Assembly: GCA_044892525.1 (NCBI GenBank)
Contig: CM097885.1
Location: 78,802,001-78,866,000, forward strand
Reading direction: 5' to 3'
Length of the DNA stretch: 64,000 nt
Source: Schmidtea polychroa
Lineage: Eukaryota
Of this stretch, positions 5,441 to 57,219 are shown piece by piece. The position numbers and the translations under genes were made by a program. Each line of letters starts with the position of its first letter. Position 1 is the stretch's first letter. The notes beneath the pieces are model-generated. The model saw only the letters and a program-made list of their open reading frames with translations, ran no database searches and had not been told where the DNA came from.

Positions 5441-5550
5441 AAAAGATCTACATATGCTGAATTTTAATGCTACCTGGAGCTCTAAATATAGATTTTAAGA
5501 TATATATAAATAGTTATATATGATTTTTCCCTCGGGGGAGTCTGTAATTG

Positions 5551-8088: not shown

Positions 8089-8106
8089 TATGATCTTCCG
8101 ACTGGG

Positions 8107-23100: not shown

Positions 23101-26100
23101 AATCCACGTAGACAATCAAACATTAGTATTCTAGATAAAACAAATAAAGCAAGCGACATAAATATGAAAACCAAAGGATTGTCGACTGATGTACGCCGTA
23201 AAAAAGGCAAACGAAGTTCTACAATTTTGGTAAGAAACGAATGTTTAGCAATCAACATTTTAAAATGAAATCTAGTGAAATCCCTAATCAGATTGTCTGT
23301 TGACTTTGTTGAAATATTTTAACTCCTTTATCCAATAATAAAATATAATAATTTTCTTGGTGGAATTTCTTAGAGATTTTGAAAAATAATTTTGAATAGT
23401 TTTTTTTATTTAAAAAAATTTAAAATTTTCCTATATTATTTCAAACCAAATTTATATTCAATGAAAACCTTGCAAATATATAGATTTCAAAAGGATTATT
23501 TAATAATAGAAAATTCTCAGTTAATAAATACTGCTTATTGATTATTTATAATTTATTGATTATTTAATATTTAATTTATGATGTTACCAAGAAACTATCT
23601 TTTTCGAATAATAATTATCAGTAGAATCTTTTCTATTCTTCATCACAACTTTCTTTTCATTAACACTTGAGCGAATGTTAAATATAAAACAAATATTGAT
23701 CGACAATCTAAAAAGTAATGATATTAATATTAGGATTATTTTACTCGAAATTTTTCTTTTAATAAAGTTTCCATCAACAACTTACAACTTTTTTGATAAT
23801 TTACATTTACAATACACTGCTGCCAAGAACCCACCAATGCGTAATAATAATAGCAATAATGATAAAACTTATCCAGATTTATCTTGCACTTAAAAACCTA
23901 TTGTCGAGATATTTTAACATTGTATATCAGTCGATATGTTAATTCTATAGCTTCATAATTTCTTGGCCAAATTTGATGATCCGTGACTAGCCTGCTACGT
24001 ACTAAATTCTACAGTCTGGTGATGAAGATAAAGATACAGCCCACACTCATTTACTTGAGTTTCGGTGTTCTTTTTTATGTGTTCTGATATTTAAGTGAAT
24101 AAGAATGTAAATACAAGCACTGACTGAGAGAGAGCAGCCATTTTAATATGATTGATGATACAAAAATTTGCTATAAGATTACTAGAGTAAGAGAAAAATA
24201 AACGTCAATGATGTTGAATTTTATTGTGTTGCTTTGAATTAGATTGATGCTTCCTTCATATCTATCTGAGTAAGTAAATACTGCAGTTGAGCACAGCATT
24301 ATAATACTACCACTAGCATTAGATTCATTCGCACATTTTCGTCTTTTATTTGTAATTTTAAAATAATCACCTTTAATAACCGCTGGAATATTTCGATAAA
24401 AGTTGATCAGTTTACATTGAGTATGAAAATGTCTAGATTTTAACTTGAACATATGAATATAAAAATCAGTAGTTTTTGTGTAAATGTGACACGTGTAATC
24501 ATTGCTGACATAAAACCCGGGAACTGTGATAATATAACTTGTACCGATAAGAACTAATAGATCATGCAAGTACGTAAGTCTTGGGCAGTTGTTGGGTTTA
24601 TTATAGGGTTTCCCACTGAATTTGATCACGTGTTTCAATTAAATTAATCCATATATTTAAATACTAAAGATCATCGAATATATTGGATTTAAATATAGTG
24701 ATTATTTTATTTTAAATACTTGATCAAGTAATTTCGAAATTTGATTTATAATTTCGTACTAATTCCACAATTGATAAATCTTTCATAAGGCTTTTTGCTC
24801 TTTTAATTCTTTCTTTTATTATAATTTCCTAAAATTTAGACTTTCTTTTCCTTCTTTTCTTATAATTTATACCTGGATTTATAGAAACTTTTTTGATCAC
24901 TAATTTATTACGTTGTCATACTGAATCGTTTTACTTTATCTAAATTTGATAATAATGAAATCTGACAATAATACAGATCCACAAACTTCCATTGGACAAA
25001 ACAATGGTTACCAAAAACAATTTTTTATCCAATTACAAAGATTTAAATTTATAACAACTTTTTAATTAATTAAATGATGAAAATAACATTGTAATTGTTT
25101 AATTTTTAAAAAGTGCTACTGAAACATACGTTTTACGATATATTTAAATAGTTTTTCTGTTATCATTAGGTAGGATAGAAAAACCTATAGATATTTAATA
25201 AAAAAATTACAAAATTAATACTAACATTTTTAATTTTAATTAATTAGCTTTATTGATCTACGAATACGTAAATTTAACATTTCATTTATTTTCATTACGA
25301 TTATAAATCAATTTGTGTTACATATGGGAAAATGAGATATCACTGTAATAAAAATTAATGAAGACAAACGCAGATATAAAGTGTACAGAAAAGTATAAGA
25401 TTCTTAAATTAATTATTTTCTCATGTGTTACCCCAAGAAGTTTACAACATTCAGTAATAAAAATTCTCAACAGTTTTTCCCCAACGACGAATTATCTTCG
25501 ACCAAAATAGAATTTCAGATTTTCTTTTTTTCATCTCAAAACATACGATATCCTTTTTGTCATTGTATCCTACAATGACTCTGATAGCTTTATATAGGGA
25601 GTTGAGATTCTTATACTTGTCTATTTATGCATCATTAACATAATATAATACATTCTTATACGATTTGAATTGACTCACTAAATCTTAGGTATATTTCTTA
25701 TTTTACATCGAATATTGAGTCACTAATCAGCAAATTTTTGCTCATAAAATATCTCATGTACATCACATCAATTGCAATTGACAAATTGCAATGACCAATT
25801 CCTAATTCATTCAACATTCTCATAAGATAACCTTTGGATCATTTAGAGATCTGATATTGAATCAAACTCAATATATTCATTGTAATGATTTGAGTTGAAA
25901 AATGTATCAGATCAATTTTGTGATGAGAGAGATCATTCAATTTATCATTATTAAATATTTCAATCACCGGATATTAGTTGTTGCTGAAAATCAGTCTCAG
26001 CAATTGTGATTCATTCATTTGAGATTGATTTATGTTTGTAATTCTATATAAAGGCCGCATTGTACAATAATTAATTGGGTTCAGATAACATGTACTGAAA

Positions 26101-26129
26101 GGATTTCATTCAAATCTCAATGCAATTGT

Positions 26130-27849
26130 ATGGCAAGCTTACAGCAGTCTCCCCAGTCGCCATTGAAAATAAATAGCCCAGCTGGAGACGATTGCCAAAT
26201 GATCGCGTTGCCTTATTCAACTCGAGTCCTGAGTAAATTGTCATCGGGATTCGACGAGAGGTTACGAGAAGACCTAACCAGTAAAATGGCCCAATATTCC
26301 AAATTCAAAGTCCGCCTGGAAGTTGTGGATGGACAGAAACAGTTTGTCTGTTCCACATGCCAGTATCGATCGGTGCATTCATTGGCAGATGTCCGCAAAC
26401 ACATCCTCGGATGCCACTGCAGTGTCAGTACGAGTTACACACGGCTTTGTTTGCGGGCCAGTCGATTAGACACCAACACTTTCTCTCTCTTCTCTGATAG
26501 GAAATTGATTTCATTCGCCAATGAGAAACTGAAGCGAGCGGAATCCGGAACCGGCTGGGATGCCAATGGAGACACAAGTGCAATGCAACTGCTCGATGAC
26601 AGTGAACCGGAGCAAGAAAGCCCGATCGACACAATCAATCGACCAATCAAACGAGTAGCAATTTCCAGTGGAGCTGTGGGCAGTATTAAACGAGCAAAGC
26701 TAACCCAGCGACAAAGCCACTCAGCGAAAATGCGATCGGACTCCCCAGTTCCAGAGGTGATCAATGGTTTTTGTCCTGGTGCCTGCTCGTTATTGATTTT
26801 TCTAGGTCGGCCAGCCACTGGAGCGAAACGAAAAAATTGATCGCACAATCCATTTGAACTATTCCTGGCACGTTCTCGAGCGGCTGGTAGTGGGCCAGTG
26901 TCCGGAACGGTACCTGCCAATATTGCGGCAGAAAATGGATGTGTATGCGCTCCATCGGATTCTGTTGACCCGTCGCAATGGCAAGCGGTATTTCCTGTGC
27001 TCTCATTGCCCGAACTGTTCCCCACACGGAATGAATGACATCCGCAAGCATATCCTCGGTGTCCATGCCCGTCTCCCGGAACGGTTCAAGGCCGCTGCCA
27101 TGTACTGCTCCCGGATGAATCGGGACAACTATGGCCTCCTATCGGATGATGAGCTACTCAAGAAAAACCAGGATATGGTTCGATGGCGGTCGGTGCCCCC
27201 GTCCAACGGTAGCGATGATAACCTGATGGAACCGTTGCTACCTCTTCAATCAGCTGTCACGACAACGGCTACTGGTTACGACGATGACAACAACAACAAC
27301 AACAACAACAGCAACAGTAAATCCCCTCTTTCACAGTGTCACAATGACAACAGTTTCAATAACCATAATAAATCATCACACAACATCTTTCTATCCGGTG
27401 ACAACAACGGTGGTGAGACAAGCCCCTATTCGTCGTCATTAGCAACCGACATGTTTCCCAGCCAATTCTTGGCTCAGTACGATGACAACAACAATCATGG
27501 ATTGCAGACATTCTTTTCCAGCATTTTCCATCCAAATATCAACAGCAGCACCATTGGCAACAGTGACATTTACACCACCGATTCAAACCCGCACAAATTC
27601 TCAGGAACAATGAATAATAACATCAAAACCAGCAACAGCAACAGCAACAACAAAAACAAAAACAACGATGCTTCAAGTGAATCATCTCCGAAACTAATTG
27701 ATGACAACTCGCCGGTTGCGTCTATGATGATGATGATCAATATGAACTCCAGCGGCGGTAAGCTGCTTAGCAACGGTCGCAGCAGACGATCTCTAGCACT
27801 TAAATCTAAGAACGCCGGCGGCAGCACCACAAATAACAACAATAGTTAA
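26130..27849 (+). CDS. 556-aa protein with two ~100-aa repeats each holding an atypical C2H2 finger, plus an Asn-rich tail; exons 26130-26756 and 26806-27849
   Basis: A 49-nt GT-AG intron joins the two ORFs in frame. Repeats are CSTC...DVRKHILGCH...SRLD...LFSD and CSHC...DIRKHILGVH...SRMN...LLSD. Confidence 0.85.
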
Positions 27850-29492: not shown

Positions 29493-32400
29493 TCATTTTT
29501 TCTTTTTTCCTTTTCCCTTCTTGCCTTTCTTTCCTTTTTTACCTTTCTTGCCCTTTCTCTTTTTCTTTCCATACGGACCCAATCCTTGGCGGGCACAAAT
29601 TGTTCTCCACCAACATTGGATTTTCAATGACGAGGCCACTTCCAGGGCTTCTTTCTCTTTCTTTCTTAGTAATTCTTCCTTTTCGATTCTATCTTTAAGG
29701 ACAACCAACTCGTATTCTTTATACTAAATATAAATAGCGTATTTGTGACATATTAATAAAACAATAAACTCACTGTCTGTGTTAATTCTAGCAAACGTTT
29801 CAAATCTTTGTCTTTGCTACTGTTGAGAATGCTTAAATTCTTTTTCAGAGTTTCGGTATCGGTTTCATATTTTTTCGTCCAATATTTCGTTTTAACTTCG
29901 ATTTTATCAAGATAATCTCGAAGCCAACTTTCAGTTTCATTGTGCACACGCTGTTCATTGTCAATCATTCGATCTAGACATGTTAGATCGGCATGAAGAT
30001 TTTGTTCGGTTTGCTGACAAATCTTGGCTGTCTGTGCTACTTGTGTCTCACATCTGGCTCGTGTGTATTTTAATTCCATGCTTGTTTTAGCTTTTGTCTC
30101 TTGCAACTGATCCTTCAAATGAGCAATCATCTCATTTCGATTTTGGATCTCTTCCAGTTCTTTTCGTTTGACATCTTCAACTTCTCTTTTCAGCTCTTTT
30201 ATTCGCTTGCGACTCAATTCCTCGCTAGATTAAATTTAATAAACCTCTTATTAGGAAACAGCTCAATCACTTTTTGATAACATCTAACAATTGCTGCTTC
30301 ATATTTAATTCATTCTCGACAGTTTTCATGAGATGATTAAACGAACCATTTTGCATTAGTTCTTCATGTGTGGCTGACAACACTTCTTGCAAAAATAATC
30401 TGTTTCATTTATTTAATTATAAATTTGGTAGTGATAATAATAAATTAAAAAGATATTGAAAATCATATAATTATTATTGTTGTTATAAATCTTAATCCGG
30501 GAAATAGAAATACCAACAGAGTAGTAGTAGTAGTCAACACACTATAAATTGGCTTTAGCAGTTAGTGACATAAAATTGACCAATTAAATTATTCCAAATC
30601 GGCCGCATAGCATTCCAGGCCAAAATGACAGTTGAAAGATATGCTTTAGTAATGTGTTTATCAAAAAGAGCTTGAAGACTATAAATCAGTAAATATATCG
30701 ATGTTTTTGATATTCACGAATTTTCGGCACTGTCTTTTTTCAAATTCACTTGAAAAAGGCAGTGCCGAAATTTTTCATAATCCTTCAGAATTAAGAATTA
30801 TCCCGAGGCTATTAAATATTCATGGCAAAATAACCGTGAAAATACTAGAGAAACGCATTTATGTGCAACACAAATAGAAACCACGCAACCAACGGTCAGC
30901 ATTATACAGTGATTAATTAGGGCCTAGCTATGTATTCCAAGAAGAATAAACTTGTTTCTATTTATTGAGTTACTCGTGTTTTCTCAAATAATCTTTCTGT
31001 TCAATAATGATTAAAATCATAGTTTATATTTTATAATATTAACAAATGCTGAATTCAATATAAAACGATGGTTTCGTGGTAGTCACGTCAATTAAAAATA
31101 AAATAATATAATAATTTTCAAGTTTTATTTAGAAAATGAGGTTTCATGAAAGCGTAACAAAATAAATTCTACTTGATAGATTTATTGAAGAACTTGATAA
31201 TAACACGTTGACGACAATCCGTGTTTTGACTTGGTTCTAGCGTAGGAAGACATGTTTTTCTCTTTTGACTCGTATGCATCATTTTTCATGTTTTCAATTG
31301 ACAGTGAAAAAAATTTTTGTTTAGATTTTTATTATTTTGAAAAAAAATTGAATATTTTTTTCAAATGATGATTTTGTAATTTATTTTTCAGGTTGCATAA
31401 ATATAAATTAATAAGTATTTAAAGAGTACATTGAAGATTACACTTAATGAAAAATAATTGTTTTAAAGTAATCAACCTAAAATATGTAAAACTGGAAACG
31501 GATGGTAATTATAAAAATTAAATCATATTAAATATTTCCAAGTTAGAATAGAATTCCTATGAGACGTGTTTGTCAATCGCAAGATTAAAAATCGATATAC
31601 AAAGGATTAAGTTGAGTTATGCTTAAGGCTAGCAAAAAGTTGGATAACGTACGCCCGGTTACTTGTCCGCTCGACAGACGGGTAACCGAATACCCCTTCA
31701 CACCACAATCTTGATATGAAATAGCACTACCTGTAACATCATGTACTTTGTTATTGCAGGAAGACGTAGATAACAGCAAGCGATCAGCGTGCATGGTACA
31801 GAACGACAGTAGCTAACAACTGATGCACGAATTTAATAAACTTTGTTTCTTTGGATAATTTCTGATTTTTGCCATTTTGGCTCATATTTTCACTGTTTTG
31901 AATAAAATATTTTTTATTTTGAATTTGAATTATAAACAGAACGAATGGGTAGTCGATCACTGATTTAGATACCCGGGTAACCGTTGAGAGCCTTAGTTAT
32001 GCTGCGAGATTCTGCAAGTTATTTTCAAGAAACCCGAGAAAAAGGAAACTATTTTTAAAAAAAAGATTCAATTAGAGAAGAGAAATTTATTAAACCTATT
32101 TTGGGTCAAAATATTTCATTTAATAACTTGAATTTCGAGGGCACTTTACAAGTCAAATTTATGAAATTTCTAAGTTATGGATTTCTTCAAATTATTAAAG
32201 ATGAAAACCTTTTATCTTATTGGTCACTGATTTCATTTTCATTTAAACCAGTGCAATAAATTCATGTTAAGTACATAAAAATATTAATCGATGGTCTAAA
32301 AATAAAAAATAAAGATGAAAAATAGAAAATCAATTTTTCTTCTTTTCTGAATAAGAAGAAACTACTACAGGATAGAATATATATTGAAGCTTGTTAAATA

Positions 32401-34332
32401 AAATCCTGAATCAGAAGAATAAAAATACGAAAATTGTATTTGGAATTGTACCAATGGGAACTGTTTAAATACAAGGTCAAAAATGAGGTTCAACGCGGGA
32501 TTTTGGTGTCAAAGGCTTTCCCGGATTAACTTACTAAAATATTGAATCAATCCATTAAAATCGTGAATTGTATCAAGTCGAATCAGCTAAGAAAATGATA
32601 AAAGACTTTTCCAGAGATTTGGATTTTTCTCTCACTATTTTCTCGTAAACCAAATAAGCTGATTTCAATTCAACAATTCCGAATAGTTCCTCAATAAAGA
32701 ATTATCAGAGGTGGCCACTTAAATTGTTCAACGTCAGAGGATTTTATAATTCGAGTTGATAATTGAATTCCGTTGTTTGGTATTTTCTTTAAATTCCAAT
32801 GGAAAAAAAAATAACAAAAGAATCAGTAAGAAAAATGGTCAATATATCCTCATCTTTATTACGAATTAAATCGAAATTTTTAAAACAAATTAATACAACC
32901 GTTAATAAAATTTATTAAATTTAATTAAAAATTATTAAAATTCTGTCAAAATTTGCAAATTAAAACAAAACTAATTCAATTTATAATTTTTTACATTATT
33001 TTATTTTTAACAGTTTTTATTAAAAGTAGTTTTATTTCAATCAATTACAGAATCCAACATGGCCTTATTAAATTTTAATTATAATTTGATTAATGATTTG
33101 TTTCGAAAGAACGCTTAATAAATTCTATTTTTCAATGAGAGGATAAAAATCTATAAACTGGAAACCAAATCAGTGGATAATCAATTTATACCAATGAAAT
33201 AAAATAGCAATTAAAATAAAGGTAATGACTAAAAACATTTTTAGATATCTTCCAATATTCACAATTTAATCTATTGCTAATTTACTTTTATTACCCTTTT
33301 GCTTTCGGTCCCTTTGCGTAGGTATCGCGGTGATGGTGATTCCCTAACTTTGACTGAAGAAAGAAATCTAATCGATTTGGGAAACAATTAAGTTTTCTAA
33401 GAACAATGTTTCGACGTTTTGAATTTCAGATCGGCGCCAATATTCTGAGTTAACTAAATAAGTTAACAAATCTTTGTTGTCTTTGTGTAGTTGATATTTG
33501 TAAATTTGGATTCTCAAGCCTAGCTGAAACGAAGTCGAAAAAATGAGTATAGTGGATTTGATGATGATTACTTGTGCGTATTTTTCTAATGCTGAGAAGC
33601 GTGTCGGTTCACAGAAACAATCCCAATTACCTCATCAAATATTTTGCACAATTCAAAGGAAATTTACACTGGTGTGCTGCAAAAAACTTTAGATATTTAG
33701 TATGCTGTGATATAGATGAGGATGAGAAATTTTAAAAATCAATATAATTTCAGTGTGAATCGTAGCTATTTACCATTTTCCCTCTTCACTATGCTTATTA
33801 AAATTAATTATATGTATATATAATTATAGTAATTATTTCATAATATTTTATTGAATTGTTACCTATCTTCTTGAACTTTCTTAATATTATCCAATGTCAA
33901 AGGATTATGATTCATATTTCGAGTAAAAACATGGACTGAATTTTTTAAATCATTTGAAATATCTTTAATTTGTTTCTTATAATGTTCAGCTTCACTTGGT
34001 AGTACTAATAAAATTAACAATTAAAACTTTAAGAATGTTTTGCTGTAAACTCCATACATCCTTTAGAATTGCTGTATTTGGTTAAAACATGCTGAAATCT
34101 TGTTTCGATATCCATATTATTGATAAGAATTTCTTCAACTTCACCATTTAAGATCTAAAGTTTAGTAATGGTTCAATTAACAAATAAAACCAAAATCTGG
34201 ACGTACGTCTAGCACATCTGGTTGCTCCACATAACTATAAGGCATTATTTTACCGAGAATATTAAGTTGTCGAACATTGTCTTCTAAAGCTGTGGCTAAA
34301 GCAACAGCTTCAGAATCGTATATTACAGACAT
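29493..34332 (-). CDS. IQCG: IQ motif-containing G / dynein regulatory complex subunit 9, 391 aa; exons 34332-34207, 34154-34058, 34004-33863, 30399-30271, 30224-29774, 29723-29493
   Basis: LEDNVRQLNILGKIMP, KKVQEDR, HLKDQLQETKAK, YWTKKYETD, IQ motif KIQCWWRTICAR and a GKK-rich tail match IQCG. All five introns are GT-AG with consistent phases. Confidence 0.93.
30675..30770 (+). repeat. Dispersed short repeat family; related copies near 35800, 38610-38680, 41705-41775, 44558 and 52408
   Basis: Shared core gaagactataaatcagtaa..atcgatgtttttgatattcacgaattttcg. This copy ends in a hairpin ttcggcactg...cagtgccgaa. Confidence 0.75.
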
Positions 34333-36399
34333 AATTTTATATTATCGAGTTTCTAAGATACATATTATTTAAACAAATCACGAAGATATAAAGATATTTC
34401 TGTTTTATTTGACAATTTTTAAAGGTATTTAATGATTAAATTAAATTAAATATAGAAAAAAATGTTATTTTTATGCATTTAAAAATACTTTAAAAAATAA
34501 TTTTGAAATGGATTTCTATCAGATATTGATAATTACATCTATTCAAATTAAAGACTATCCTCAAATGATATGACGTTATCATAAAAATTACTACAAATTA
34601 AATATGAAAGTTTATTTGCTTACAATAACTTCATACCTTCTTCCAATTAAATGAAATCGAAAATTTTGAGTTACTCACAAATTAAACATTTACTTATAAG
34701 ATTTGGATTCCCCAGAATTTTAATCAATACATTGTATTTTGGGATTTCCTGCCTTTGCGAATTCTTAACCAAAGATTTCACTCAAAAATATTATTGAATA
34801 TTATATGTTATACTGAGGTTCAGTAAGGAAGAAAGTAATATGTGATTTTGTTGATCTAACTTTGTCTTTTAAACTCATTTTACGTAGCTAAGCCATTATT
34901 AATTGTCATAAGTTTATTTGGTACAGCATCAATTACTATTTACTGTTGTAATAACAATTTAATTAAAATTTTGCAAATATATTTCTCCAATTTCTTTATA
35001 CTGCATGCAAATTCCTATTTTCCGAGACATTTTGTCAAAAAGTAACATCAAATTTAAACATCAAAATTATCAGAATCTACCGTAACCAAATTGTTCCACT
35101 TTTGATAATCAATTGACATTTAAATTTAAACTCTTTCCCATGTTCGAAAAAAAAATTTTTACGGTTGCGTTATTACAACATTTCGGTAGGAAATAAATAA
35201 TATTATGAATTTTCGTGTCCTTTCTATTGAAGAAACATAACTCAAAACAATAAACTTTATTTCCGATATAGTAATTCTAAATTTTTAATAGATAAGCACT
35301 CAACAATCACGAATTTTATATGCTCCGCAAGCTATTGTATTTAACTATATTGGTTTTAACTATGGGTAATCCCGAGGAGAATCGGCTCAAATTTTGTCAC
35401 ATAAGAATGTGACTTGACTTCTCTGCATGATCCTACTATTAATTTCTTTGAATAAGACGACAAATTAGATCATATTTATTTGATCTTATATAAGGATATC
35501 TCAACATTTATCAATAGAATTTTTAAACCATATCACTGTTTTACAAACTCCTTAACCTGAACAAAAAATTTATTTTCAATCACTTTTCTTCCGCTTGACA
35601 GTCTATTATTATATTTGTGTAGCTCAGGGACTTTTTTTCTAACTGAAATGATCAATGCCACCAACAGGATTTTAAATAATAAATTAATAAATTTGTATCT
35701 TAGTAATTAATAACCCATTAATTTAGAATAAATATATTTGTGTTTTATTGTTTCGTATGATGCCCCGATACCTTAAATTAAATTTATATATACGTGGTCA
35801 TCGATATATTACTGATTTATAGTCTTCAGTCTTTCTTTTTAATAAATTTAATAAATTCAATATTTAGTCGTATATATCTAAATATATTGGTATTTGTTTT
35901 AATCAGTTATTACTTAATTAATAAATTTTACAATTTATTTTAAAATACCCATCAAAAGAGTGCATTATTGCAGTGTCATTCGTTTTCTCTTTATAAAAAG
36001 CTGAGTGCTGTTTATGGCGATGAATAGTTATCAAATGCAACTATTTACCGTTGGCAGAATAAATTTCTGAGTGAAAGAACTTCAATTTATGATAAGGATA
36101 AGCCAAGTAGACATTGTGAAATCAAAGAAAAAAATGGAAGACCTAAAATATAGTTCAGGCTGAGTGAAAAATTACAACTAGAGAGTTAGTAATGCGCCTG
36201 AATGTGAGTAAAAGCACTACTTATACAATACTCAAATAAAGTAGAATAAGAAAATTATATTATCGCTTTGTATTATGTTTTTATTGCTGAAATACAAAAT
36301 CGACGTCTGTAGTGTTGCGAAGAAAATCTTCAAATCTTGGACGTTAGATAGCATTTTTTTGAGAATATTATTACCATGGATGAGATAACACTTTATTTA

Positions 36400-37020
36400 T
36401 GTTCCATAGTTTAAACTGGAATCTGAAATGTGGAAACTACATAGAGAGGTCTGTTCTAAGAAGATGAAGTCATCAACTAGTCATTGAAGGGCGCTCATAC
36501 TGACTGTGTTTTCGGATGTCAGTGGCATAATTCTAGTTGATTTTGCCAAAGTGGTGTTCAAATTAACAGCTCATAATACTACAAACTTGTGCAAGAAACA
36601 AGGAAGCTCCAGTCACAATTAGTGGTTATTGTTTTGGTTGGTTGTGAATTCATGTTACAATTACACAATGAAGCTCCAATGTAAAAGCATCGTGTGTGGG
36701 CTCTATGACTTACACGATAACATTTCCCATCCAAACGAGTGTAGTTTCAATGGGAAAAATTGAGAGTTGTGAACGTATCGTGCTTTTCCATCTTCCATAC
36801 AGGCCGGATTTGGCTCCTTTAGACTTATATGTGTTTAATCACCTCAAGAAATCTCCTGCGAGATCAGCCGTTTGCTATAAAATACCATTGTAAAAATGGA
36901 GTGACGCATTTTCTTCGTGAAAATTCTCCGAATTTCTTCAGAATCGCTTTCCAAACCCGAGTTTCACGCCGACAAAATGTGTCGATGTAAATGGAAATTA
37001 TTTTGAGAAATAAATCCTAC
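36400..37020 (+). mobile_element. Decayed mariner transposase remnant (left arm)
   Basis: HLPYRPDLAPLDLYVFNHLKK resembles mariner HPPYSPDLAPSDYxLF; upstream TVF.D..GIILVDF-like segment. Confidence 0.75.
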
Positions 37021-39227
37021 ATGACTTACTTCTTATAAATACAATATATTTGCGTTCGTTTATTTATTTCTATATGGGTCTCACTAGTTATAGGGCACAC
37101 CACGAATTTGATTTACATTCTAATATTTTTGTAAAATAATTCTTAGTATGAGGTCTTCTATAAATGAATACTTGTTTATATTTTTACAATTTAATTAAAC
37201 AGGGTGACATAGATGGTCACTATAATTTATTTATTTCTTTTTCCAATAACACTTTCACATAAATTAAACATTCTATTAAATTTTATATTTGTTATAATCT
37301 TAAAGTTTCTAATATTTCATCCAAAAGATTTATATTACTTTTTCTGAAAAAAATTTTTTACACCTTTTATTAAATTTTCCATTCAATTGTTGTGGTTCAA
37401 CAAGAAAGGTACAAAAATGAGGTTGTTGGGTTTTAATATTTTTGAGTCGGTACTGTCTGACTTCTTGTGTTCCTTTAATTGAAAATCACAAATAACAAAA
37501 CTACCCAACGTATATTACAAATTTTTACAATTAACCGGATATGCAAATAATATTATTTATCAATTACTCGATCAAGCTCTGCTGCATGATATCTGGACTA
37601 TGTGGGATTCACTATAAAAATCACCTTTTAATATTCTTGTTTTCCTTTAACGTTACTCTTTATTCTGATTCCCTAATTTCCTTTGATTCAATTCTTCCCT
37701 TTTTATTTTTTTGGTTTCCTTTAATCTTTTACTCTTCCCCTTTTTATCGTTTAACAATACTACTTTTTATTTCTTCAATTACCGTTTCCCTACCCTTTGT
37801 CTTCTCGTATCTTAATTTTCCTTCAAACCTAACCTCGATTTCTTCCATCCCTAACTAAGGCAAACTGCCGATTATTTTGAATTTCGACTTTGCTTTTATA
37901 CTAAAATAATCACTTTGATTAATTGGTTTTTGACCGGATCGCCTTTATCTGACAATGGTTTGACAACCGGTTTTATCGAACGCTTTTTGAACCATATAGT
38001 GATTAATTGCCTCCCTTTGTTAATCCTTTGTGGTAGCCATAAACTTTGTTTGTCTCCATTAATCATGCTGTCATGATAATGGCCTTCCGAGATTCTGATT
38101 TTGTTAATTTTCCATGTTAATCGAGCTCGGGTTTCCTTCATCTCTCGGGTTCTCTATTGGCTCGAGTTTCCTATTAGCTCGGGTTTTCTATTAGCCAATT
38201 AATTAATTAATTAAGGATTTTTTGTTTTAACACCTTCGAATACTTTTCGACTCTTTCTAAACATTTCTGATAAATTTCTAATCACCATCTTGTTAACCAT
38301 TACCTAATCTATACCTGCCTCGTTTTTCCGATTCAATTTCGATAAATTTAGAATTTATTGATTTTTTCGGATTTGCGAATTTTTGCCTTTCGTAACTGCT
38401 TTTGCTATTTCCTAATACTGTTTCCATCATAATTTCCTTTGCCACCAATTCTGTGCATGACCACAATTTTATTTGTCTTTTTCATTCGAACTACATTTTA
38501 TTTAAATTTCTTTTAATTTACTGACCTCAACAAGGTAAAAAATCAATAAAAACATCAAATTCACAATAATAATTTGAAGAATAAAAATATTATTTAAAAA
38601 AATGCACTTGGAAAAGGCAGTTCCGAAAATTCGTGAGTATCAAAAAACATCGATGTATTATTGATTTATAGTCTTCAAGCTCTCTTTTTCATAAATGTGA
38701 CTCCTATTGACGTTTTATTTTGATAAATCGTCTTTGCTTTGCTTTCAACTAAAACTTTTGTCCTGCATTTTTATTTGGTTTCCCCAAACGAAGTAGAAAT
38801 TTAAAAACTTTACAACACTTACATGTAACTTGTCGGTTAACGATTATTATAATTTCAATAAGGAATGATTGCATAGAGATTGACAAATAAGAAAGAGATT
38901 TACAAAGAAAAGAACAAATTAATTAAAGAAATAAAGAATTAAAAATTAAAACAAATTTGCTTCTCATTTAAAGGCAACCGAACAAATAGATAATTCTGTT
39001 AGTGAAATTATTAATGTGATTCCCTTGAATTGGAGCATTTGACATGGCGTGTAGATTGATATATATTACCAAATATCAAGTGTCTAATAATAGATAAAGC
39101 TGTGAAATGTATAGAAATAATAATTTAGCGATCGGAAAATCTGAGCGGGTGCGTTGAAAATGTATAGAATTATGAAATGGTAATGAAATAGAAAATGATA
39201 TAAATCGACGTGAAAATGAATTATTTC

Positions 39228-39381
39228 AAACTTACTTGGTGTTGGTGCTACCGTGATCACTCAGGCGGTACACCCGGAGCGAGGCTTTGTCATTGCACTG
39301 CGATGGGGTTGACCTCCGCGCTTCTCCAAATCGGATAAGTCGAACATGTAATTTTTGTTAGTGGGGACTTTCGGGTCCCTG
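39228..39381 (+). ncRNA. U1: Variant U1 snRNA (U1b), 5' end AAACUUACUUGG
   Basis: SL1 loop GAUCACUCAG, SL2 loop CAUUGCACU, SL3 CCAAAU, Sm site AAUUUUUG, SL4 GGGGAC-U-UUCG-G-GUCCCU. All stems pair. Confidence 0.92.
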
Positions 39382-39649
39382 ATGAAAATTAAATTAATAT
39401 TTTTTTATCTATCTTGTTTCTCAATACTTCAATTTATTATTAATATCAACGAAATATTATTTATCTCAATTCACTCAATAATTAAACTTTAACCAAAAAA
39501 AATTATAGTTCCATTAAACTAATGTAAATCAAATAATGAAGTCTGTAAAATTCTATTTTACAGCTTCGTTATAAATTATTTTAAGATAAAATCATTAGTA
39601 GCAGAAATTTGTGAATTTTATATTAGAGAATGGCTTGGTGAATAAATTC

Positions 39650-39804
39650 ATACTTACCTGGCGCGGTTTAACCATGATCATCGAGGTGGTTTTTCCAAGA
39701 TGAGATTACTTCATTGCACTCTGAAGTGGTTGACTCTTGCGACTGCTCCAAATAGGGGTGGCTCGAGCGCACAATTTTTGGTAGTGAGGACCATTTGGAT
39801 CCTT
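39650..39804 (+). ncRNA. U1: U1 snRNA (U1a), canonical 5' end AUACUUACCUGG
   Basis: SL1 loop GAUCAUCGAG, SL2 loop CAUUGCACU, SL3 CCAAAU, Sm site AAUUUUUG followed by GUAGUG, terminal hairpin AGGACC-AUUU-GGAUCCU. Confidence 0.96.
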
Positions 39805-40580
39805 ATTAATAATGGAAATTAATTATTTTAAACTACTATAGACTAAATTTTAAGAGAAAAAAATTTTTATGAAGAAATTATAATATGACTTTTTAAATTA
39901 TGTTAAATTTTATGCATTCAATCAACTTTTCAATAAGTTCAAAAAAACCAAAAAAAATTTAATTCAAAACTACTTACTAACTTTGACAGTAGTTCATTTC
40001 TAACATAATTAATTTTATTTGAAAAATATTTTGTCTAATATTAATTAAAATTATATCAAAAAAAAAATTTACTTAGGTTATTTCATGAATAAATCATAGA
40101 ACAATTCATTGGGAGGTATAGTTGATTGAATATGAATATAAGAGATAATATAACAACGAAAAGTGTTGATTAGGCAAGTTAGAGATGACTAAAAATTAGC
40201 CGTAAAGCTAATAAAATACGAATTTCAAAATTTATTAAATAAATGATATATATGGCTCTATGATACATTTATTAAATTCATTGTTTTTTAAAGTGCTAAA
40301 TTAAATATATGAAATAACCTAAGTAAATAATATAATTTAAATAATATTAGACAAAATATTTTTCAAATAAAATTAATTATGTTAGAAATGAACTACTGTC
40401 AAAGTTAGTAAGTAGTGTTGAATTAAATTTTTTTTGGTTTTTTTGAACTTATTGAAAAGTTGATTGAATGCATAAAATTTAACATAATTTAAAAAGTCAT
40501 ATTATAATTTCTTCATAAAAATTTTTTTCTCTTAAAATTTAGTCTATAGTAGTTTAAAATAATTAATTTCCATTATTAAT

Positions 40581-40735
40581 AAGGATCCAAATGGTCCTCA
40601 CTACCAAAAATTGTGCGCTCGAGCCACCCCTATTTGGAGCAGTCGCAAGAGTCAACCACTTCAGAGTGCAATGAAGTAATCTCATCTTGGAAAAACCACC
40701 TCGATGATCATGGTTAAACCGCGCCAGGTAAGTAT
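40581..40735 (-). ncRNA. U1: U1a, mirror copy
   Basis: Reverse complement of 39650-39804. Confidence 0.96.
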
Positions 40736-41003
40736 GAATTTATTCACCAAGCCATTCTCTAATATAAAATTCACAAATTTCTGCTACTAATGATTTTATC
40801 TTAAAATAATTTATAACGAAGCTGTAAAATAGAATTTTACAGACTTCATTATTTGATTTACATTAGTTTAATGGAACTATAATTTTTTTTGGTTAAAGTT
40901 TAATTATTGAGTGAATTGAGATAAATAATATTTCGTTGATATTAATAATAAATTGAAGTATTGAGAAACAAGATAGATAAAAAAATATTAATTTAATTTT
41001 CAT

Positions 41004-41157
41004 CAGGGACCCGAAAGTCCCCACTAACAAAAATTACATGTTCGACTTATCCGATTTGGAGAAGCGCGGAGGTCAACCCCATCGCAGTGCAATGACAAAG
41101 CCTCGCTCCGGGTGTACCGCCTGAGTGATCACGGTAGCACCAACACCAAGTAAGTTT
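41004..41157 (-). ncRNA. U1: U1b, mirror copy
   Basis: Reverse complement of 39228-39381. Confidence 0.92.
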
Positions 41158-43364
41158 GAAATAATTCATTTTCACGTCGATTTATATCATTTTCTATTTC
41201 ATTACCATTTCATAATTCTATACATTTTCAACGCACCCGCTCAGATTTTCCGATCGCTAAATTATTATTTCTATACATTTCACAGCTTTATCTATTATTA
41301 GACACTTGATATTTGGTAATATATATCAATCTACACGCCATGTCAAATGCTCCAATTCAAGGGAATCACATTAATAATTTCACTAACAGAATTATCTATT
41401 TGTTCGGTTGCCTTTAAATGAGAAGCAAATTTGTTTTAATTTTTAATTCTTTATTTCTTTAATTAATTTGTTCTTTTCTTTGTAAATCTCTTTCTTATTT
41501 GTCAATCTCTATGCAATCATTCCTTATTGAAATTATAATAATCGTTAACCGACAAGTTACATGTAAGTGTTGTAAAGTTTTTAAATTTCTACTTCGTTTG
41601 GGGAAACCAAATAAAAATGCAGGACAAAAGTTTTAGTTGAAAGCAAAGCAAAGACGATTTATCAAAATAAAACGTCAATAGGAGTCACATTTATGAAAAA
41701 GAGAGCTTGAAGACTATAAATCAATAATACATCGATGTTTTTTGATACTCACGAATTTTCGGAACTGCCTTTTCCAAGTGCATTTTTTTAAATAATATTT
41801 TTATTCTTCAAATTATTATTGTGAATTTGATGTTTTTATTGATTTTTTACCTTGTTGAGGTCAGTAAATTAAAAGAAATTTAAATAAAATGTAGTTCGAA
41901 TGAAAAAGACAAATAAAATTGTGGTCATGCACAGAATTGGTGGCAAAGGAAATTATGATGGAAACAGTATTAGGAAATAGCAAAAGCAGTTACGAAAGGC
42001 AAAAATTCGCAAATCCGAAAAAATCAATAAATTCTAAATTTATCGAAATTGAATCGGAAAAACGAGGCAGGTATAGATTAGGTAATGGTTAACAAGATGG
42101 TGATTAGAAATTTATCAGAAATGTTTAGAAAGAGTCGAAAAGTATTCGAAGGTGTTAAAACAAAAAATCCTTAATTAATTAATTAATTGGCTAATAGAAA
42201 ACCCGAGCTAATAGGAAACTCGAGCCAATAGAGAACCCGAGAGATGAAGGAAACCCGAGCTCGATTAACATGGAAAATTAACAAAATCAGAATCTCGGAA
42301 GGCCATTATCATGACAGCATGATTAATGGAGACAAACAAAGTTTATGGCTACCACAAAGGATTAACAAAGGGAGGCAATTAATCACTATATGGTTCAAAA
42401 AGCGTTCGATAAAACCGGTTGTCAAACCATTGTCAGATAAAGGCGATCCGGTCAAAAACCAATTAATCAAAGTGATTATTTTAGTATAAAAGCAAAGTCG
42501 AAATTCAAAATAATCGGCAGTTTGCCTTAGTTAGGGATGGAAGAAATCGAGGTTAGGTTTGAAGGAAAATTAAGATACGAGAAGACAAAGGGTAGGGAAA
42601 CGGTAATTGAAGAAATAAAAAGTAGTATTGTTAAACGATAAAAAGGGGAAGAGTAAAAGATTAAAGGAAACCAAAAAAATAAAAAGGGAAGAATTGAATC
42701 AAAGGAAATTAGGGAATCAGAATAAAGAGTAACGTTAAAGGAAAACAAGAATATTAAAAGGTGATTTTTATAGTGAATCCCACATAGTCCAGATATCATG
42801 CAGCAGAGCTTGATCGAGTAATTGATAAATAATATTATTTGCATATCCGGTTAATTGTAAAAATTTGTAATATACGTTGGGTAGTTTTGTTATTTGTGAT
42901 TTTCAATTAAAGGAACACAAGAAGTCAGACAGTACCGACTCAAAAATATTAAAACCCAACAACCTCATTTTTGTACCTTTCTTGTTGAACCACAACAATT
43001 GAATGGAAAATTTAATAAAAGGTGTAAAAAATTTTTTTCAGAAAAAGTAATATAAATCTTTTGGATGAAATATTAGAAACTTTAAGATTATAACAAATAT
43101 AAAATTTAATAGAATGTTTAATTTATGTGAAAGTGTTATTGGAAAAAGAAATAAATAAATTATAGTGACCATCTATGTCACCCTGTTTAATTAAATTGTA
43201 AAAATATAAACAAGTATTCATTTATAGAAGACCTCATACTAAGAATTATTTTACAAAAATATTAGAATGTAAATCAAATTCGTGGTGTGCCCTATAACTA
43301 GTGAGACCCATATAGAAATAAATAAACGAACGCAAATATATTGTATTTATAAGAAGTAAGTCAT

Positions 43365-43985
43365 GTAGGATTTATTTCTCAAAATAATTTCCATTTACAT
43401 CGACACATTTTGTCGGCGTGAAACTCGGGTTTGGAAAGCGATTCTGAAGAAATTCGGAGAATTTTCACGAAGAAAATGCGTCACTCCATTTTTACAATGG
43501 TATTTTATAGCAAACGGCTGATCTCGCAGGAGATTTCTTGAGGTGATTAAACACATATAAGTCTAAAGGAGCCAAATCCGGCCTGTATGGAAGATGGAAA
43601 AGCACGATACGTTCACAACTCTCAATTTTTCCCATTGAAACTACACTCGTTTGGATGGGAAATGTTATCGTGTAAGTCATAGAGCCCACACACGATGCTT
43701 TTACATTGGAGCTTCATTGTGTAATTGTAACATGAATTCACAACCAACCAAAACAATAACCACTAATTGTGACTGGAGCTTCCTTGTTTCTTGCACAAGT
43801 TTGTAGTATTATGAGCTGTTAATTTGAACACCACTTTGGCAAAATCAACTAGAATTATGCCACTGACATCCGAAAACACAGTCAGTATGAGCGCCCTTCA
43901 ATGACTAGTTGATGACTTCATCTTCTTAGAACAGACCTCTCTATGTAGTTTCCACATTTCAGATTCCAGTTTAAACTATGGAACA
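43365..43985 (-). mobile_element. Mirror copy of the mariner remnant
   Basis: Identical ORF at 43492-43689. Confidence 0.75.
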
Positions 43986-46331
43986 TAAATAAAGTGTTAT
44001 CTCATCCATGGTAATAATATTCTCAAAAAAATGCTATCTAACGTCCAAGATTTGAAGATTTTCTTCGCAACACTACAGACGTCGATTTTGTATTTCAGCA
44101 ATAAAAACATAATACAAAGCGATAATATAATTTTCTTATTCTACTTTATTTGAGTATTGTATAAGTAGTGCTTTTACTCACATTCAGGCGCATTACTAAC
44201 TCTCTAGTTGTAATTTTTCACTCAGCCTGAACTATATTTTAGGTCTTCCATTTTTTTCTTTGATTTCACAATGTCTACTTGGCTTATCCTTATCATAAAT
44301 TGAAGTTCTTTCACTCAGAAATTTATTCTGCCAACGGTAAATAGTTGCATTTGATAACTATTCATCGCCATAAACAGCACTCAGCTTTTTATAAAGAGAA
44401 AACGAATGACACTGCAATAATGCACTCTTTTGATGGGTATTTTAAAATAAATTGTAAAATTTATTAATTAAGTAATAACTGATTAAAACAAATACCAATA
44501 TATTTAGATATATACGACTAAATATTGAATTTATTAAATTTATTAAAAAGAAAGACTGAAGACTATAAATCAGTAATATATCGATGACCACGTATATATA
44601 AATTTAATTTAAGGTATCGGGGCATCATACGAAACAATAAAACACAAATATATTTATTCTAAATTAATGGGTTATTAATTACTAAGATACAAATTTATTA
44701 ATTTATTATTTAAAATCCTGTTGGTGGCATTGATCATTTCAGTTAGAAAAAAAGTCCCTGAGCTACACAAATATAATAATAGACTGTCAAGCGGAAGAAA
44801 AGTGATTGAAAATAAATTTTTTGTTCAGGTTAAGGAGTTTGTAAAACAGTGATATGGTTTAAAAATTCTATTGATAAATGTTGAGATATCCTTATATAAG
44901 ATCAAATAAATATGATCTAATTTGTCGTCTTATTCAAAGAAATTAATAGTAGGATTATGCAGAGAAGTCAAGTCACATTCTTATGTGACAAAATTTGAGC
45001 CGATTCTCCTCGGGATTACCCATAGTTAAAACCAATATAGTTAAATACAATAGCTTGCGGAGCATATAAAATTCGTGATTGTTGAGTGCTTATCTATTAA
45101 AAATTTAGAATTACTATATCGGAAATAAAGTTTATTGTTTTGAGTTATGTTTCTTCAATAGAAAGGACACGAAAATTCATAATATTATTTATTTCCTACC
45201 GAAATGTTGTAATAACGCAACCGTAAAAATTTTTTTTTCGAACATGGAAAAGAGTTTAAATTTAAATGTCAATTGATTATCAAAAGTGGAACAATTTGGT
45301 TACGGTAGATTCTGATAATTTTGATGTTTAAATTTGATGTTACTTTTTGACAAAATGTCTCGGAAAATAGAAATTTGCATGCAGTATAAAGAAATTGGAG
45401 AAATATATTTGCAAAATTTTAATAAAAAGAAAAATCAGATCAAAGGTGAACAAAAAAATAAAACACTTTACTCATCATCTATACATTTTTTGAGCAATTT
45501 ACACAGAAATATTCCGTGGAATCTTTAATAGGATAATTAAAATTTTCAAAATTTTTCTATTTGAATTGGTGTCATGTTAAGTGAGAAAGGGAAACGTTCT
45601 AAAGTTTGGTTTAGGGTATTTACCTCTCATAGAAATTAAAATAAATTATTATTATATTAGTTAGTTTGATATCTTCTATATGTTGACCATGACGAGTTAT
45701 TATGCTATCGAAGTAACGAAAGAATCCAAGCGTGATAAATCATAGGAAAACAGTAATTGGAAAAATAAATAAATTATAGGTGACCATCTATAATCTTAAA
45801 AAAATCTATAACCTTATATTATACAAAAATACAAACTTTGAATCCTTCACTTTTTTTCAAAATATAAAACTTAATAAAACTAAAATGGTAAAAGTCACTA
45901 TTTTTGCATAAAGTAAAATTGGGTAATTACAATAAAAGACTGGTTTTATATAGCATATTCAAATTAAAAATCTGTATTTCATTTTATCAATTACGTAGGA
46001 CATTTTTTAAAGTATCCGGTTCCTCTGGTTTATCCGACATTGGTATCAAATTATGTAAAGCTCAGTATAGTTCAATAAAACAACTCGAAAATTATTTTGC
46101 TAATAAAATCCTTACATTTTGGTAACAGATTCAATTTTGTTTATTTTTCGAGAATACGATTAAACTAAAAATTAATAGTTGTTTAAATGAATTAGTTATT
46201 TTGTTATATTTCAAATAATTCAAATTTTATTTCAGATGATATTTCTAAAAATTTCTAATTAAAATTGTGTAAACTGAAATTTATTATTATTATATAATTG
46301 GAATTTTTTGTTCGAACAAATACTGAATCTA

Positions 46332-57012: not shown

Positions 57013-57219
57013 NNNNNNNNNNNNNNNNNNNNNNNNNNNNNNNNNNNNNNNNNNNNNNNNNNNNNNNNNNNNNNNNNNNNNNNNNNNNNNNNNNNNNNNN
57101 NNNNNNNNNNNNNNNNNNNNNNNNNNNNNNNNNNNNNNNNNNNNNNNNNNNNNNNNNNNNNNNNNNNNNNNNNNNNNNNNNNNNNNNNNNNNNNNNNNNN
57201 NNNNNNNNNNNNNNNNNNN
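57013..57219. other. Assembly gap
   Basis: Run of N. Confidence 1.

What the first reader, a model, noticed from the sequence alone, without database searches (positions are those of the whole stretch)
39228..39804. Two deeply divergent U1 snRNAs in tandem, one with an altered splice-site recognition sequence (C9U)
Seen: U1a and U1b differ throughout the stems (roughly 60% identity by eye, not computed) but share the loops GAUCA, CAUUGCACU and CCAAAU, the UUGAC bulge and the Sm site. Stem differences are compensatory: SL1 AACCAU/GUGGUU vs UACCGU/GCGGUA, SL2 CAAGA/UCUUG vs CGGAG/CUCCG, closing helix GCGC/GCGC vs UGUU/AACA. U1b starts AAACUUACUUG. Established: U1 C9 pairs with exon position -1; SL1 binds U1-70K, SL2 binds U1A, and the SL4 UUCG loop contacts SF3A1. 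An AAAC start occurs in nematode U1, so C9U is the unusual change. The two are mosaic: U1b keeps GAUCAC and a UUCG tetraloop, whereas U1a has the canonical 5' end but GAUCAU and an AUUU loop. Inference: both are maintained by selection, forming a two-U1 system in which U1b favours donors with A at -1 (G still pairs by wobble), or acts in a specific tissue or stage, or in a non-splicing role.
Basis: partly seen in the sequence, partly recalled or inferred. Interest (0 to 1): 0.88.

Follow-up and report, generated by a model that had tools for sequence, protein, structure and literature searches.

The report
Planarian main and variant U1 genes
The window holds a mirror-image cluster of four U1 splicing-RNA genes of the planarian Schmidtea: two copies of the main U1 and two of a variant whose splice-site-reading end is changed. 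A 2018 paper already described this pair and showed both are expressed; what is new here is evidence that the variant lineage is old and conserved.

Summary
U1b (39228-39381) and U1a (39650-39805) both pass Rfam U1 (105 and 111 bits, threshold 69.5). They are 63% identical, and U1b starts AAACUUACUUGG.

The genes are already published. Schmidt et al. 2018 (PMC6312358) list Schmidtea mediterranea U1A1 and U1C1/U1C2 in the same C-A-A-C inverted order. Each differs from the window genes by one base. They report small-RNA reads of 49,347 versus 1,828 and 1,099, RT-PCR validation, 2-4-fold stem-cell enrichment of U1C, and the C-to-U change facing exon position -1.

New here: a metagenome scan found 12 further distinct U1 genes starting AAACUUACUUGG. 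Every one on a contig long enough sits beside a canonical U1. With the 5' end removed they form one clade with U1b (99/98). That clade shows strong compensatory change (26 of 46 pairs) and seven fixed differences outside the first 12 bases. A recent duplication in the window's lineage is rejected (p-AU 0.003).

The proposed preference for A at -1 remains untested.

Verdict: real, functional and already known. The deep conservation is a modest extension.

The parts
39228..39381 (+). U1b: variant U1 snRNA gene (class B), starting AAACUUACUUGG. It corresponds to Schmidtea mediterranea U1C1/U1C2.
   Evidence: It scores 105.4 bits against Rfam U1. The published U1C2 forward and U1C1 reverse primers match exactly at 39236-39255 and 39367-39386. 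By eye it differs by one base from each published sequence.
39650..39805 (+). U1a: canonical major U1 snRNA gene (class A), starting AUACUUACCUGG. It corresponds to S. mediterranea U1A1.
   Evidence: It scores 110.9 bits against Rfam U1. The published U1A1 forward primer matches exactly at 39694-39719. There is one difference from published U1A1, at position 32 (GAUCAU here, GAUCAC in the paper).
40580..40735 (-). U1a': second copy of the canonical U1, in the other palindrome arm.
   Evidence: It scores 110.9 bits against Rfam U1 and is identical to U1a. There is a primer match at 40666-40691.
41004..41157 (-). U1b': second copy of the variant U1, in the other palindrome arm.
   Evidence: It scores 105.4 bits against Rfam U1 and is identical to U1b. 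There are primer matches at 41130-41149 and 40999-41018.
34962..40049 (.). Left arm of the inverted repeat. It carries U1b, U1a and a mariner-like transposase remnant.
   Evidence: the repeat finder reports 100% complementarity over the part examined. Extending base by base gives only five mismatches down to 34962, after which similarity ends.
40050..40335 (.). Central spacer of the palindrome (286 nt). Its edges are an imperfect continuation of the arms.
40336..45423 (.). Right arm of the inverted repeat, carrying U1a' and U1b'.
39216..39227 (+). The 12 bases just upstream of U1b (ATGAATTATTTC). U1a has the near-identical GTGAATAAATTC at 39638-39649. This is a candidate start-site element.
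   Evidence: Read directly from the sequence and from the alignment of the upstream regions. Function is inferred only.
39199..39205 (+). TATA-like TATAAAT at -29 to -23 of U1b. U1a has TATATTA at 39619-39625 (-31 to -25). These are candidates only, because the DNA is about 70% A+T.
   Evidence: Read directly from the sequence. snRNA genes on related contigs also show TATA-like boxes near -30.
39391..39398 (+). AAATTAAT at 10 nt downstream of U1b. The same octamer lies 11 nt downstream of U1a (39816-39823). This is a candidate 3' box for Integrator cleavage.
   Evidence: Read directly from the sequence. The published work detects unprocessed read-through transcripts of both genes. Function is inferred.

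Best explanation
The window is from the planarian Schmidtea (S. mediterranea or a very close relative). It contains one of that genome's palindromic U1 clusters, ordered variant, canonical, canonical', variant'.

U1a is the major spliceosomal U1 (published name U1A1). U1b is the published minor variant U1C. It is a real, transcribed U1 paralogue present at a few per cent of U1A1 read counts and is enriched in stem cells.

U1b keeps the sequences that bind U1-70K (stem-loop 1 loop), U1A (stem-loop 2 loop AUUGCAC) and the Sm ring. It therefore most likely forms an ordinary U1 snRNP.

Its 5' end differs at the two positions that face exon position -1 (C9 to U) and intron position +7 (U2 to A). 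This should strengthen pairing with donors of the type A|GUAAGUU. G at -1 remains usable through a G-U wobble.

Shown here: the identity of the genes, their structure, the covariation, the palindrome, and membership of an old conserved lineage that always sits beside a canonical U1. Taken from the paper: expression and stem-cell enrichment. Inferred: snRNP formation and the shift in donor preference.
For: Rfam hits.

Identity to published S. mediterranea sequences: exact matches of published primers, and by-eye one-base differences from published U1A1, U1C1 and U1C2. The published scaffold coordinates show the same inverted C1-A1-A1-C1 order.

Published expression data: read counts of 49,347 for U1A1 against 1,828 and 1,099 for U1C1 and U1C2, RT-PCR validation, 2-4-fold enrichment in the stem-cell fraction, and a C-to-U change facing -1.

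Flatworm origin: the DRC9 exon's best named relative is Macrostomum lignano.

Conserved lineage: the metagenome scan gave 36 loci, and Rfam finds canonical and variant U1 side by side on them. In a tree built without the first 12 bases, all 13 AAAC...U9 sequences form one clade (99/98). U1b is sister to the L026 variant and U1a is sister to the L026 canonical gene. Placing the window's two genes in one clade is rejected (p-AU 0.003). Ten diagnostic positions separate the classes, seven of them outside the first 12 bases (three of the ten are near-fixed in class A, 10 of 11), and neighbouring genes are only 55-68% identical in every taxon.

Structural constraint within the variant class: 97.5% of cells paired and 26 of 46 pairs compensatory.

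Energetics: CAA|GUAAGUUU gives -12.3 kcal/mol with U1b against -6.8 with U1a. CAG|GUAAGUAU gives -11.2 against -15.3.
Against: No experiment links U1b to particular donors, and the published dsRNA knock-down did not reduce it.

My metagenome pattern required ACUUACUUGG, so U at position 9 in those hits is partly a product of how they were found. Only A at position 2 and the body of the RNA are independent evidence. The published S. mediterranea U1D1 is a second, diverged variant that was found by others without that pattern. It also starts AAACUUACUUGG, but I compared it by eye only.

The deepest level of the duplication is not secure. A tree in which the window pair and the L026 pair form one clade is not rejected (p-AU 0.116).

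The taxonomic origin of the metagenome contigs is inferred from U1 and U2 peculiarities, not established.

Species identity rests on short, conserved genes. The immediate flanks differ by 1-2 bases from the published primers.
Confidence: 0.75

Rival explanations
1. U1b is functionally redundant with U1a. It is kept only to supply extra U1 dosage in dividing stem cells, and the C9U and U2A changes are nearly neutral because G-U wobble tolerates them.
For: Published read counts for U1b are only about 2-4% of U1A1. The paper itself suggests higher spliceosome activity in stem cells. U1b still pairs with canonical donors at -11 to -12 kcal/mol.
Against: The two classes stay distinct next to each other in 11 taxa (55-68% identity), with no homogenisation. 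They have fixed differences at positions 2, 9, 16, 94-95, 104 and 111-112. All 13 variant genes have A at position 2, which the search pattern did not require. Pure dosage would be served equally well by more copies of U1a.
Confidence: 0.2
2. U1b acts mainly outside splice-site selection. It might suppress premature cleavage and polyadenylation at a different set of sites, or act as a competitor that blocks certain donors.
For: The authors of the planarian study raise both possibilities. Human variant U1s are reported to affect gene expression broadly, as cited in that paper.
Against: There is no direct evidence either way. U1b keeps every element needed for a normal U1 snRNP, so a splicing role is the simpler reading.
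Confidence: 0.1
3. U1b is a decaying pseudogene, or the palindrome and its second gene pair are an assembly artefact.
For: The arms are almost identical (five mismatches in 5,088 nt), as a fold-back misassembly would be. U1b scores slightly lower than U1a against Rfam.
Against: The RNA is detected by small-RNA sequencing and RT-PCR. Its lineage shows strong compensatory evolution. The same inverted arrangement appears on two scaffolds of an independent, older assembly. The arms are not perfectly identical.
Confidence: 0.03

Closest known systems
Schmidtea mediterranea U1A1 and U1C1/U1C2 snRNAs (Schmidt et al. 2018, PLoS Genet, PMC6312358)
   Same: These are the same genes. There is one base difference each. 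The start AAACUUACUUGG, the lengths (154 and 156 nt) and the inverted C-A-A-C locus layout all agree. The paper already notes the C-to-U change facing -1, and reports expression and stem-cell enrichment.
   Different: The window copy of U1b combines the U1C2 base at position 21 with the U1C1 base at position 140. U1a has U instead of C after GAUCA. Gene spacing is 422 and 775 nt here, against 437 and 876 nt or 434 and 923 nt on the published scaffolds. From what I read of the paper, it does not report that the variant lineage is conserved outside this species.
Human variant U1 and 'U1-like' snRNAs with altered 5' ends (Kyriakopoulou 2006 and O'Reilly 2013, from my own knowledge; Mabin 2021, PMC8457000, seen)
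   Same: They are minor U1 paralogues with changes in the splice-site-recognition sequence. They are expressed at low level, are higher in stem cells, and are proposed to recognise alternative donors or to regulate 3'-end formation.
   Different: The human variants are recent, lineage-specific copies with many different changes. The class described here is one old lineage with one fixed 5' end, and it is always linked to a canonical gene.
Developmental U1 isoforms of Xenopus, mouse, Drosophila and Bombyx (my own knowledge; Lu and Matera 2014, PMC4291461, seen)
   Same: There are several U1 genes with stage- or tissue-biased expression.
   Different: Those isoforms differ by a few bases in the stems and keep the canonical 5' end. 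U1a and U1b differ at 37% of positions as well as in the 5' end.
Nematode U1, which starts AAACUUACCUG
   Same: Position 2 is A, which matches the U-rich +7 of nematode donors.
   Different: Nematode U1 keeps C at position 9 and is the only U1 type in the genome. Here A2 and U9 occur together in a second paralogue.
U11 snRNA of the minor spliceosome
   Same: It is a second donor-recognising snRNA that works beside U1 on its own class of introns. This is an analogy of role only.
   Different: It has a different fold, 5' sequence and protein partners. The window genes score as U1, and no U11 match was reported.

Membership tests
U1 spliceosomal snRNA (Rfam RF00003) | Covariance-model score at or above the curated gathering score (69.5 bits), full length | tested here: met
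   The scores are 105.4 bits (U1b, U1b') and 110.9 bits (U1a, U1a'). All four cover model positions 1-166.
U1 spliceosomal snRNA (Rfam RF00003) | A four-way junction (helix H and stem-loops 1-3) plus stem-loop 4, maintained by compensatory change | tested here: met
   Single-sequence folds give this shape. In the variant-class alignment, 46 pairs are 97.5% paired and 26 show changes on both sides; slid controls give 37-50% paired.
U1 spliceosomal snRNA (Rfam RF00003) | Single-stranded 5' end whose positions 3-8 (ACUUAC) pair with intron positions +6 to +1 | tested here: met
   ACUUAC is present at positions 3-8 in both genes.
U1 spliceosomal snRNA (Rfam RF00003) | C at position 9, pairing with G at exon position -1 | tested here: not met
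   U1a has C. U1b has U, and also has A instead of U at position 2. This is a departure in one conserved base, not in the fold, so U1b is filed as a variant U1.
U1 spliceosomal snRNA (Rfam RF00003) | Protein-binding sequences: the stem-loop 1 loop (GAUCA..AGG) for U1-70K, the stem-loop 2 loop AUUGCAC for U1A, and the Sm site AAUUUUUG | tested here: met
   All are present in both genes and invariant or nearly so across the 13 variant-class sequences. Binding itself was not tested.
U1 spliceosomal snRNA (Rfam RF00003) | A stable transcript with a trimethylguanosine cap and Sm core | not testable with these tools
   Transcripts are reported by small-RNA sequencing and RT-PCR. No data on cap or Sm association were found.
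Schmidtea mediterranea U1A1 / U1C genes (PMC6312358) | Sequence identity with the published RNAs | tested here: met
   Published primers match exactly at the expected places. A by-eye comparison with the S1 table gives one difference per gene. The full sequences could not be aligned by tool, because the paper's sequences have no reference id.
Schmidtea mediterranea U1A1 / U1C genes (PMC6312358) | Locus layout: variant(+), canonical(+), canonical(-), variant(-) | tested here: met
   Published: scaffold8222 at 12132-12285(+), 12569-12724(+), 13600-13755(-) and 14039-14192(-). Window: 39228(+), 39650(+), 40580-40735(-) and 41004-41157(-).
U11 snRNA (minor spliceosome) | A match to the U11 model and a 5' end complementary to AUAUCC-type donors | tested here: not met
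   The Rfam scan of the whole window reports only U1. The 5' end is of U1 type.

The most novel reading that the evidence does not exclude
The AAACUUACUUGG U1 (class B) is not a planarian curiosity. It would be an ancient second U1 lineage shared by many free-living flatworm-like animals, always encoded next to a canonical U1 (in some taxa inside the rDNA spacer or the 5S repeat). It would be kept because it recognises a distinct set of donors with A at -1 and U at +7. That would make it a standing two-U1 system within the major spliceosome. Its age and linkage are fairly well supported here; the separate donor specificity is not tested.
Probability: 0.35. Interest if true: 0.7.

Novelty: already known. 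Interest (0 to 1): 0.35.

Why it matters
The 5' end of U1 is among the most strictly conserved RNA sequences known. It is preserved even in tunicates in which most introns have lost GT-AG ends (PMC13326754). A U1 paralogue that carries a fixed change at the base facing exon position -1 is therefore a rare natural experiment in donor-site recognition. It is expressed, stem-cell enriched and, on the evidence here, conserved across deeply diverged relatives. Planarians allow in vivo tests. Only the depth of conservation and the constant linkage to a canonical U1 add to it.

Tried and rejected
Organism identification:
- Window ORFs gave nothing close. The 26130-26840 ORF had no hits, and the retroelement reverse transcriptase had a best hit of only 53% identity, unnamed.
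- PDB and Pfam searches on other ORFs gave nothing useful.
- What worked was the DRC9 exon, which pointed to flatworms and then to the planarian paper.

Promoter comparison: I looked for the insect snRNA promoter element PSEA using Hernandez et al. 2007. No TTC.C-type element sits at -60 to -40, so the insect idea was dropped.

Other negative searches:
- The rotifer spliced-leader sequence, recalled from memory, is absent from the window and the loci. This is not informative.
- A full-text search for the 5' end sequence returned only primers and small RNAs unrelated to U1.
- A viral-contig scan gave no hits.
- Exact look-ups of the spurious ORFs that overlap U1b and U1a gave nothing on record.
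- A literature search for snRNA genes in rDNA spacers did not identify the clade.

Metagenome pattern hits that are not U1 genes: L001, L010 and L022 are chance matches. L004/L028 and L009/L014/L025 are U1 5' halves fused to other sequence.

Full report
WHAT IS IN THE SEQUENCE

A Rfam scan of the whole window reports four full-length U1 snRNA genes, not two:
- U1b at 39228-39381 (+), 105.4 bits
- U1a at 39650-39805 (+), 110.9 bits
- an identical U1a' at 40580-40735 (-)
- an identical U1b' at 41004-41157 (-)

The gathering score is 69.5 bits. The four genes lie in an inverted repeat. Its arms are 34962-40049 and 40336-45423, each 5,088 nt long, with five mismatches between them. A 286 nt spacer separates the arms.

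The two genes are 63% identical (99 of 157 aligned columns). They share GAUCA, CAUUGCACU, CCAAAU, UUGAC and the Sm site, and the quoted stem differences are compensatory. U1b starts AAACUUACUUGG, so it differs from the canonical 5' end at position 2 (U to A) and position 9 (C to U). Each RNA folds on its own into the U1 four-way junction plus stem-loop 4.

WHICH ORGANISM

The window is about 28% G+C and rich in transposon remains. The only conserved host gene I found encodes dynein regulatory complex protein 9, at 29496-34326 on the minus strand. Its best named relative is the protein of the flatworm Macrostomum lignano, at 48% identity. One unnamed Logan contig is 81% identical.

That pointed to flatworm literature and to Schmidt et al. 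2018 (PLoS Genet, PMC6312358). Their S1 table lists the Schmidtea mediterranea U1 variants with sequences, loci and read counts.
- Compared by eye, published U1A1 (156 nt) equals the window's U1a except at position 32.
- Published U1C1 and U1C2 (154 nt) each differ from the window's U1b at one position. The window has the U1C2 base at position 21 and the U1C1 base at position 140.
- Their U1C2 forward, U1C1 reverse and U1A1 forward primers match the window exactly at the expected places.
- A primer that reaches into the U1A1 downstream flank matches with two mismatches.
- Their scaffold coordinates show the same order: variant(+), canonical(+), canonical(-), variant(-).

The window is therefore from S. 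mediterranea or a very close relative. Because the same layout appears in an independent assembly, the palindrome is unlikely to be an assembly artefact.

WHAT WAS ALREADY KNOWN

The paper reports the following:
- 49,347 unique small-RNA reads for U1A1, 1,828 for U1C1 and 1,099 for U1C2, with RT-PCR validation
- 2-4-fold enrichment of U1C in the sorted stem-cell fraction, and reduction after stem-cell depletion
- a proposed role in recognising specific donors, a dominant-negative role, or a role in polyadenylation
- that dsRNA against U1C did not reduce it

WHAT I CAN ADD: THE VARIANT LINEAGE IS OLD

I scanned public metagenome contigs for U1-like sequences with U at position 9 and obtained 36 loci. 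Rfam shows that many of these contigs carry a high-scoring canonical U1 (130-150 bits) a few hundred bases from a lower-scoring U1 (103-124 bits) that starts AAACUUACUUGG.

This holds for L005, L011, L012, L016, L018, L023, L024, L026, L029, L031 and the L007/L013/L019/L034/L035 group. In the last group and in L016 the order is LSU rRNA, U5, U1, variant U1, U2. In L005, L024, L026 and L031 the pair is linked to 5S rRNA genes.

After removing duplicates there are 13 variant-class and 11 canonical-class sequences, including the window's.
- In a maximum-likelihood tree built without the first 12 bases, the 13 variant sequences form one clade (99/98). The window's U1b is sister to the L026 variant (83/93), and the window's U1a is sister to the L026 canonical gene (99/97).
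- Forcing the window's two genes into one clade costs 34.7 log-likelihood units and is rejected (p-AU 0.003). Forcing the window pair and the L026 pair together is not rejected (p-AU 0.116). The duplication therefore certainly predates the split from the L026 organism. Its greater depth is well supported by bootstrap but not beyond doubt.
- The classes differ at ten diagnostic positions, seven of them fully fixed in both classes. These are positions 2, 9, 16, 94-95 (GCGAC versus GCGCU after stem-loop 2), 104, a one-base gap, 111-112 and 153.
- Neighbouring genes are only 55-68% identical in every taxon, so they are not being homogenised.
- Within the variant class alone, 97.5% of cells in the 46 predicted pairs are paired, against 37-50% for slid controls. 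Twenty-six pairs show changes on both sides.
- In L007 the variant gene shares an upstream motif with the canonical U1, U2 and U5 genes on the same contig (read by eye).

The U2 gene of L026 shares the unusual features of published Schmidtea U2. The U2 genes of L016 and L007 share some of them. The contigs are therefore probably from free-living flatworms, but this is an inference.

CAVEATS ON THE CONSERVATION CLAIM

The scan pattern contained ACUUACUUGG. U at position 9 in the metagenome hits is therefore guaranteed by how they were found. Only A at position 2 (13 of 13) and the body of the RNA are independent evidence.

One piece of unbiased support comes from the paper. U1D1 is a second S. 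mediterranea variant that differs widely from U1C in its stems and lies between two copies of another canonical-type gene (U1B1). It also starts AAACUUACUUGG and carries the GCGCU and AGUCGAG signatures. I compared it by eye only, because the sequence has no reference id.

HOW IT MOST LIKELY WORKS

U1b keeps the loops and the Sm site that recruit U1-70K, U1A and the Sm ring. It most likely forms a normal U1 snRNP.

From established U1-donor pairing, position 9 faces exon -1 and position 2 faces intron +7. Nearest-neighbour energies, ignoring pseudouridines, are as follows:
- CAA|GUAAGUUU: -12.3 kcal/mol with U1b, -6.8 with U1a
- CAG|GUAAGUAU: -11.2 kcal/mol with U1b, -15.3 with U1a

I read five donors by eye in the neighbouring DRC9 gene: GAC|GUACGU, GAU|GUAUGG, UAG|GUAACA, AAA|GUGAUU and ACA|GUGAGU. 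Only one has G at -1 and two have A. For those two, U1b pairs better by 1.5-1.9 kcal/mol. Five sites are an anecdote, not a test.

The rival readings cannot be excluded with sequence alone. These are extra U1 dosage in stem cells with a nearly neutral 5' change, or a role in 3'-end control or competition.

The 'mosaic' argument fails. The base after GAUCA is A, C, G or U among related canonical U1s and is C in published U1A1. The stem-loop 4 loops vary freely.

A2 is not a side issue. A2 and U9 occur together in all 13 variant-class sequences from the window and the metagenome contigs, and in the published U1C1, U1C2 and U1D1; the poorly expressed U1D2 and U1D3 of the paper, which share the U1D body, have altered 5' ends.

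VERDICT

The feature is real and almost certainly functional. For this organism it is already described, including expression. The new elements are modest but of some interest: a conserved, linked variant lineage across many uncultured relatives, and placement of the pair within rDNA or 5S units in some of them. I rate novelty as already known and interest as 0.35.

Noticed in passing
window 3267-10876 (-): A Ty3/gypsy-type LTR retroelement. ORFs carry reverse transcriptase and RNase H (8107-9534), the end of RNase H plus the integrase zinc domain (7534-8088), and the integrase core (5551-7473). The polyprotein is split over several reading frames. The closest database reverse transcriptase is only 53% identical.
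   Followed up: partly
window 29496-34326 (-): The gene for dynein regulatory complex protein 9 (IQCG). Six exon blocks were mapped with the Macrostomum protein. Introns are 50-60 nt apart from one of about 3.4 kb. Only one of the five donors has G at -1. The first exons lie about 640 nt outside the left end of the palindrome.
   Followed up: partly
window 36672-36890 (+) and 43495-43713 (-): A remnant resembling a mariner/Tc1 transposase C-terminus (..PYRPDLAPLDLY..) is present in both palindrome arms. The duplicated unit is therefore more than the snRNA genes. It had no Pfam hit at E 0.01.
   Followed up: no
window 26052-27846 (+): A G+C-rich island (45% against a background of about 28%) holds two adjacent long ORFs in different frames. 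Both carry a repeated Cys-x2-Cys ... His-x4-His motif, and the second has long Asn runs. There was no Pfam, PDB or database homologue.
   Followed up: partly
window 3-245 (-), 54222-54557 (-), 57893-58708 (-): Further transposase-like fragments. There is a weak piggyBac-type DDE hit at 3-245. The other two look like hAT/pogo-type remnants by eye but had no Pfam hit.
   Followed up: no
L007, L013, L016, L019, L034, L035: These metagenome rDNA units have U5, canonical U1, variant U1 and U2 genes directly after the LSU rRNA gene. I found no description of such an arrangement in the searched literature.
   Followed up: partly
L026 1-1988: An apparent 1.87 kb tandem unit: 5S rRNA, U2, tRNA, canonical U1, variant U1, then 5S again. 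Its U2 shares the unusual features of Schmidtea U2, so it is probably from a planarian-like flatworm.
   Followed up: partly
L003; L008/L017/L032/L036; L002/L030/L033; L015: High-scoring U1 genes (125-151 bits) with U at position 9 but without A at position 2; they start AUACUUACUUGG or UAACUUACUUGG. No second U1 lies on the same contig, although some contigs exceed 10 kb. They may be variant genes of other animals, or sole U1s with a changed 5' end.
   Followed up: no
L004/L028 and L009/L014/L025: The 5' half of a U1 (through stem-loop 2, with U9) is fused to unrelated sequence, and the same fusion recurs on several contigs. These may be truncated pseudogenes or SINE heads derived from U1.
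   Followed up: no
PMC6312358 S1 table (not in this window): S. mediterranea also expresses U1A2 and U1A3, which start AAACUAACCUGG (A at position 6, facing intron +3). Their read counts are 9,354 and 3,251, more than U1C. A second variant/canonical pair (U1D1 between two U1B1 copies) lies on another scaffold.
   Followed up: no
window 14771-14913, 19951-20130, 54834-54967, 57013-57219: Four runs of N, 134-207 nt long. They were left as they are.
   Followed up: no
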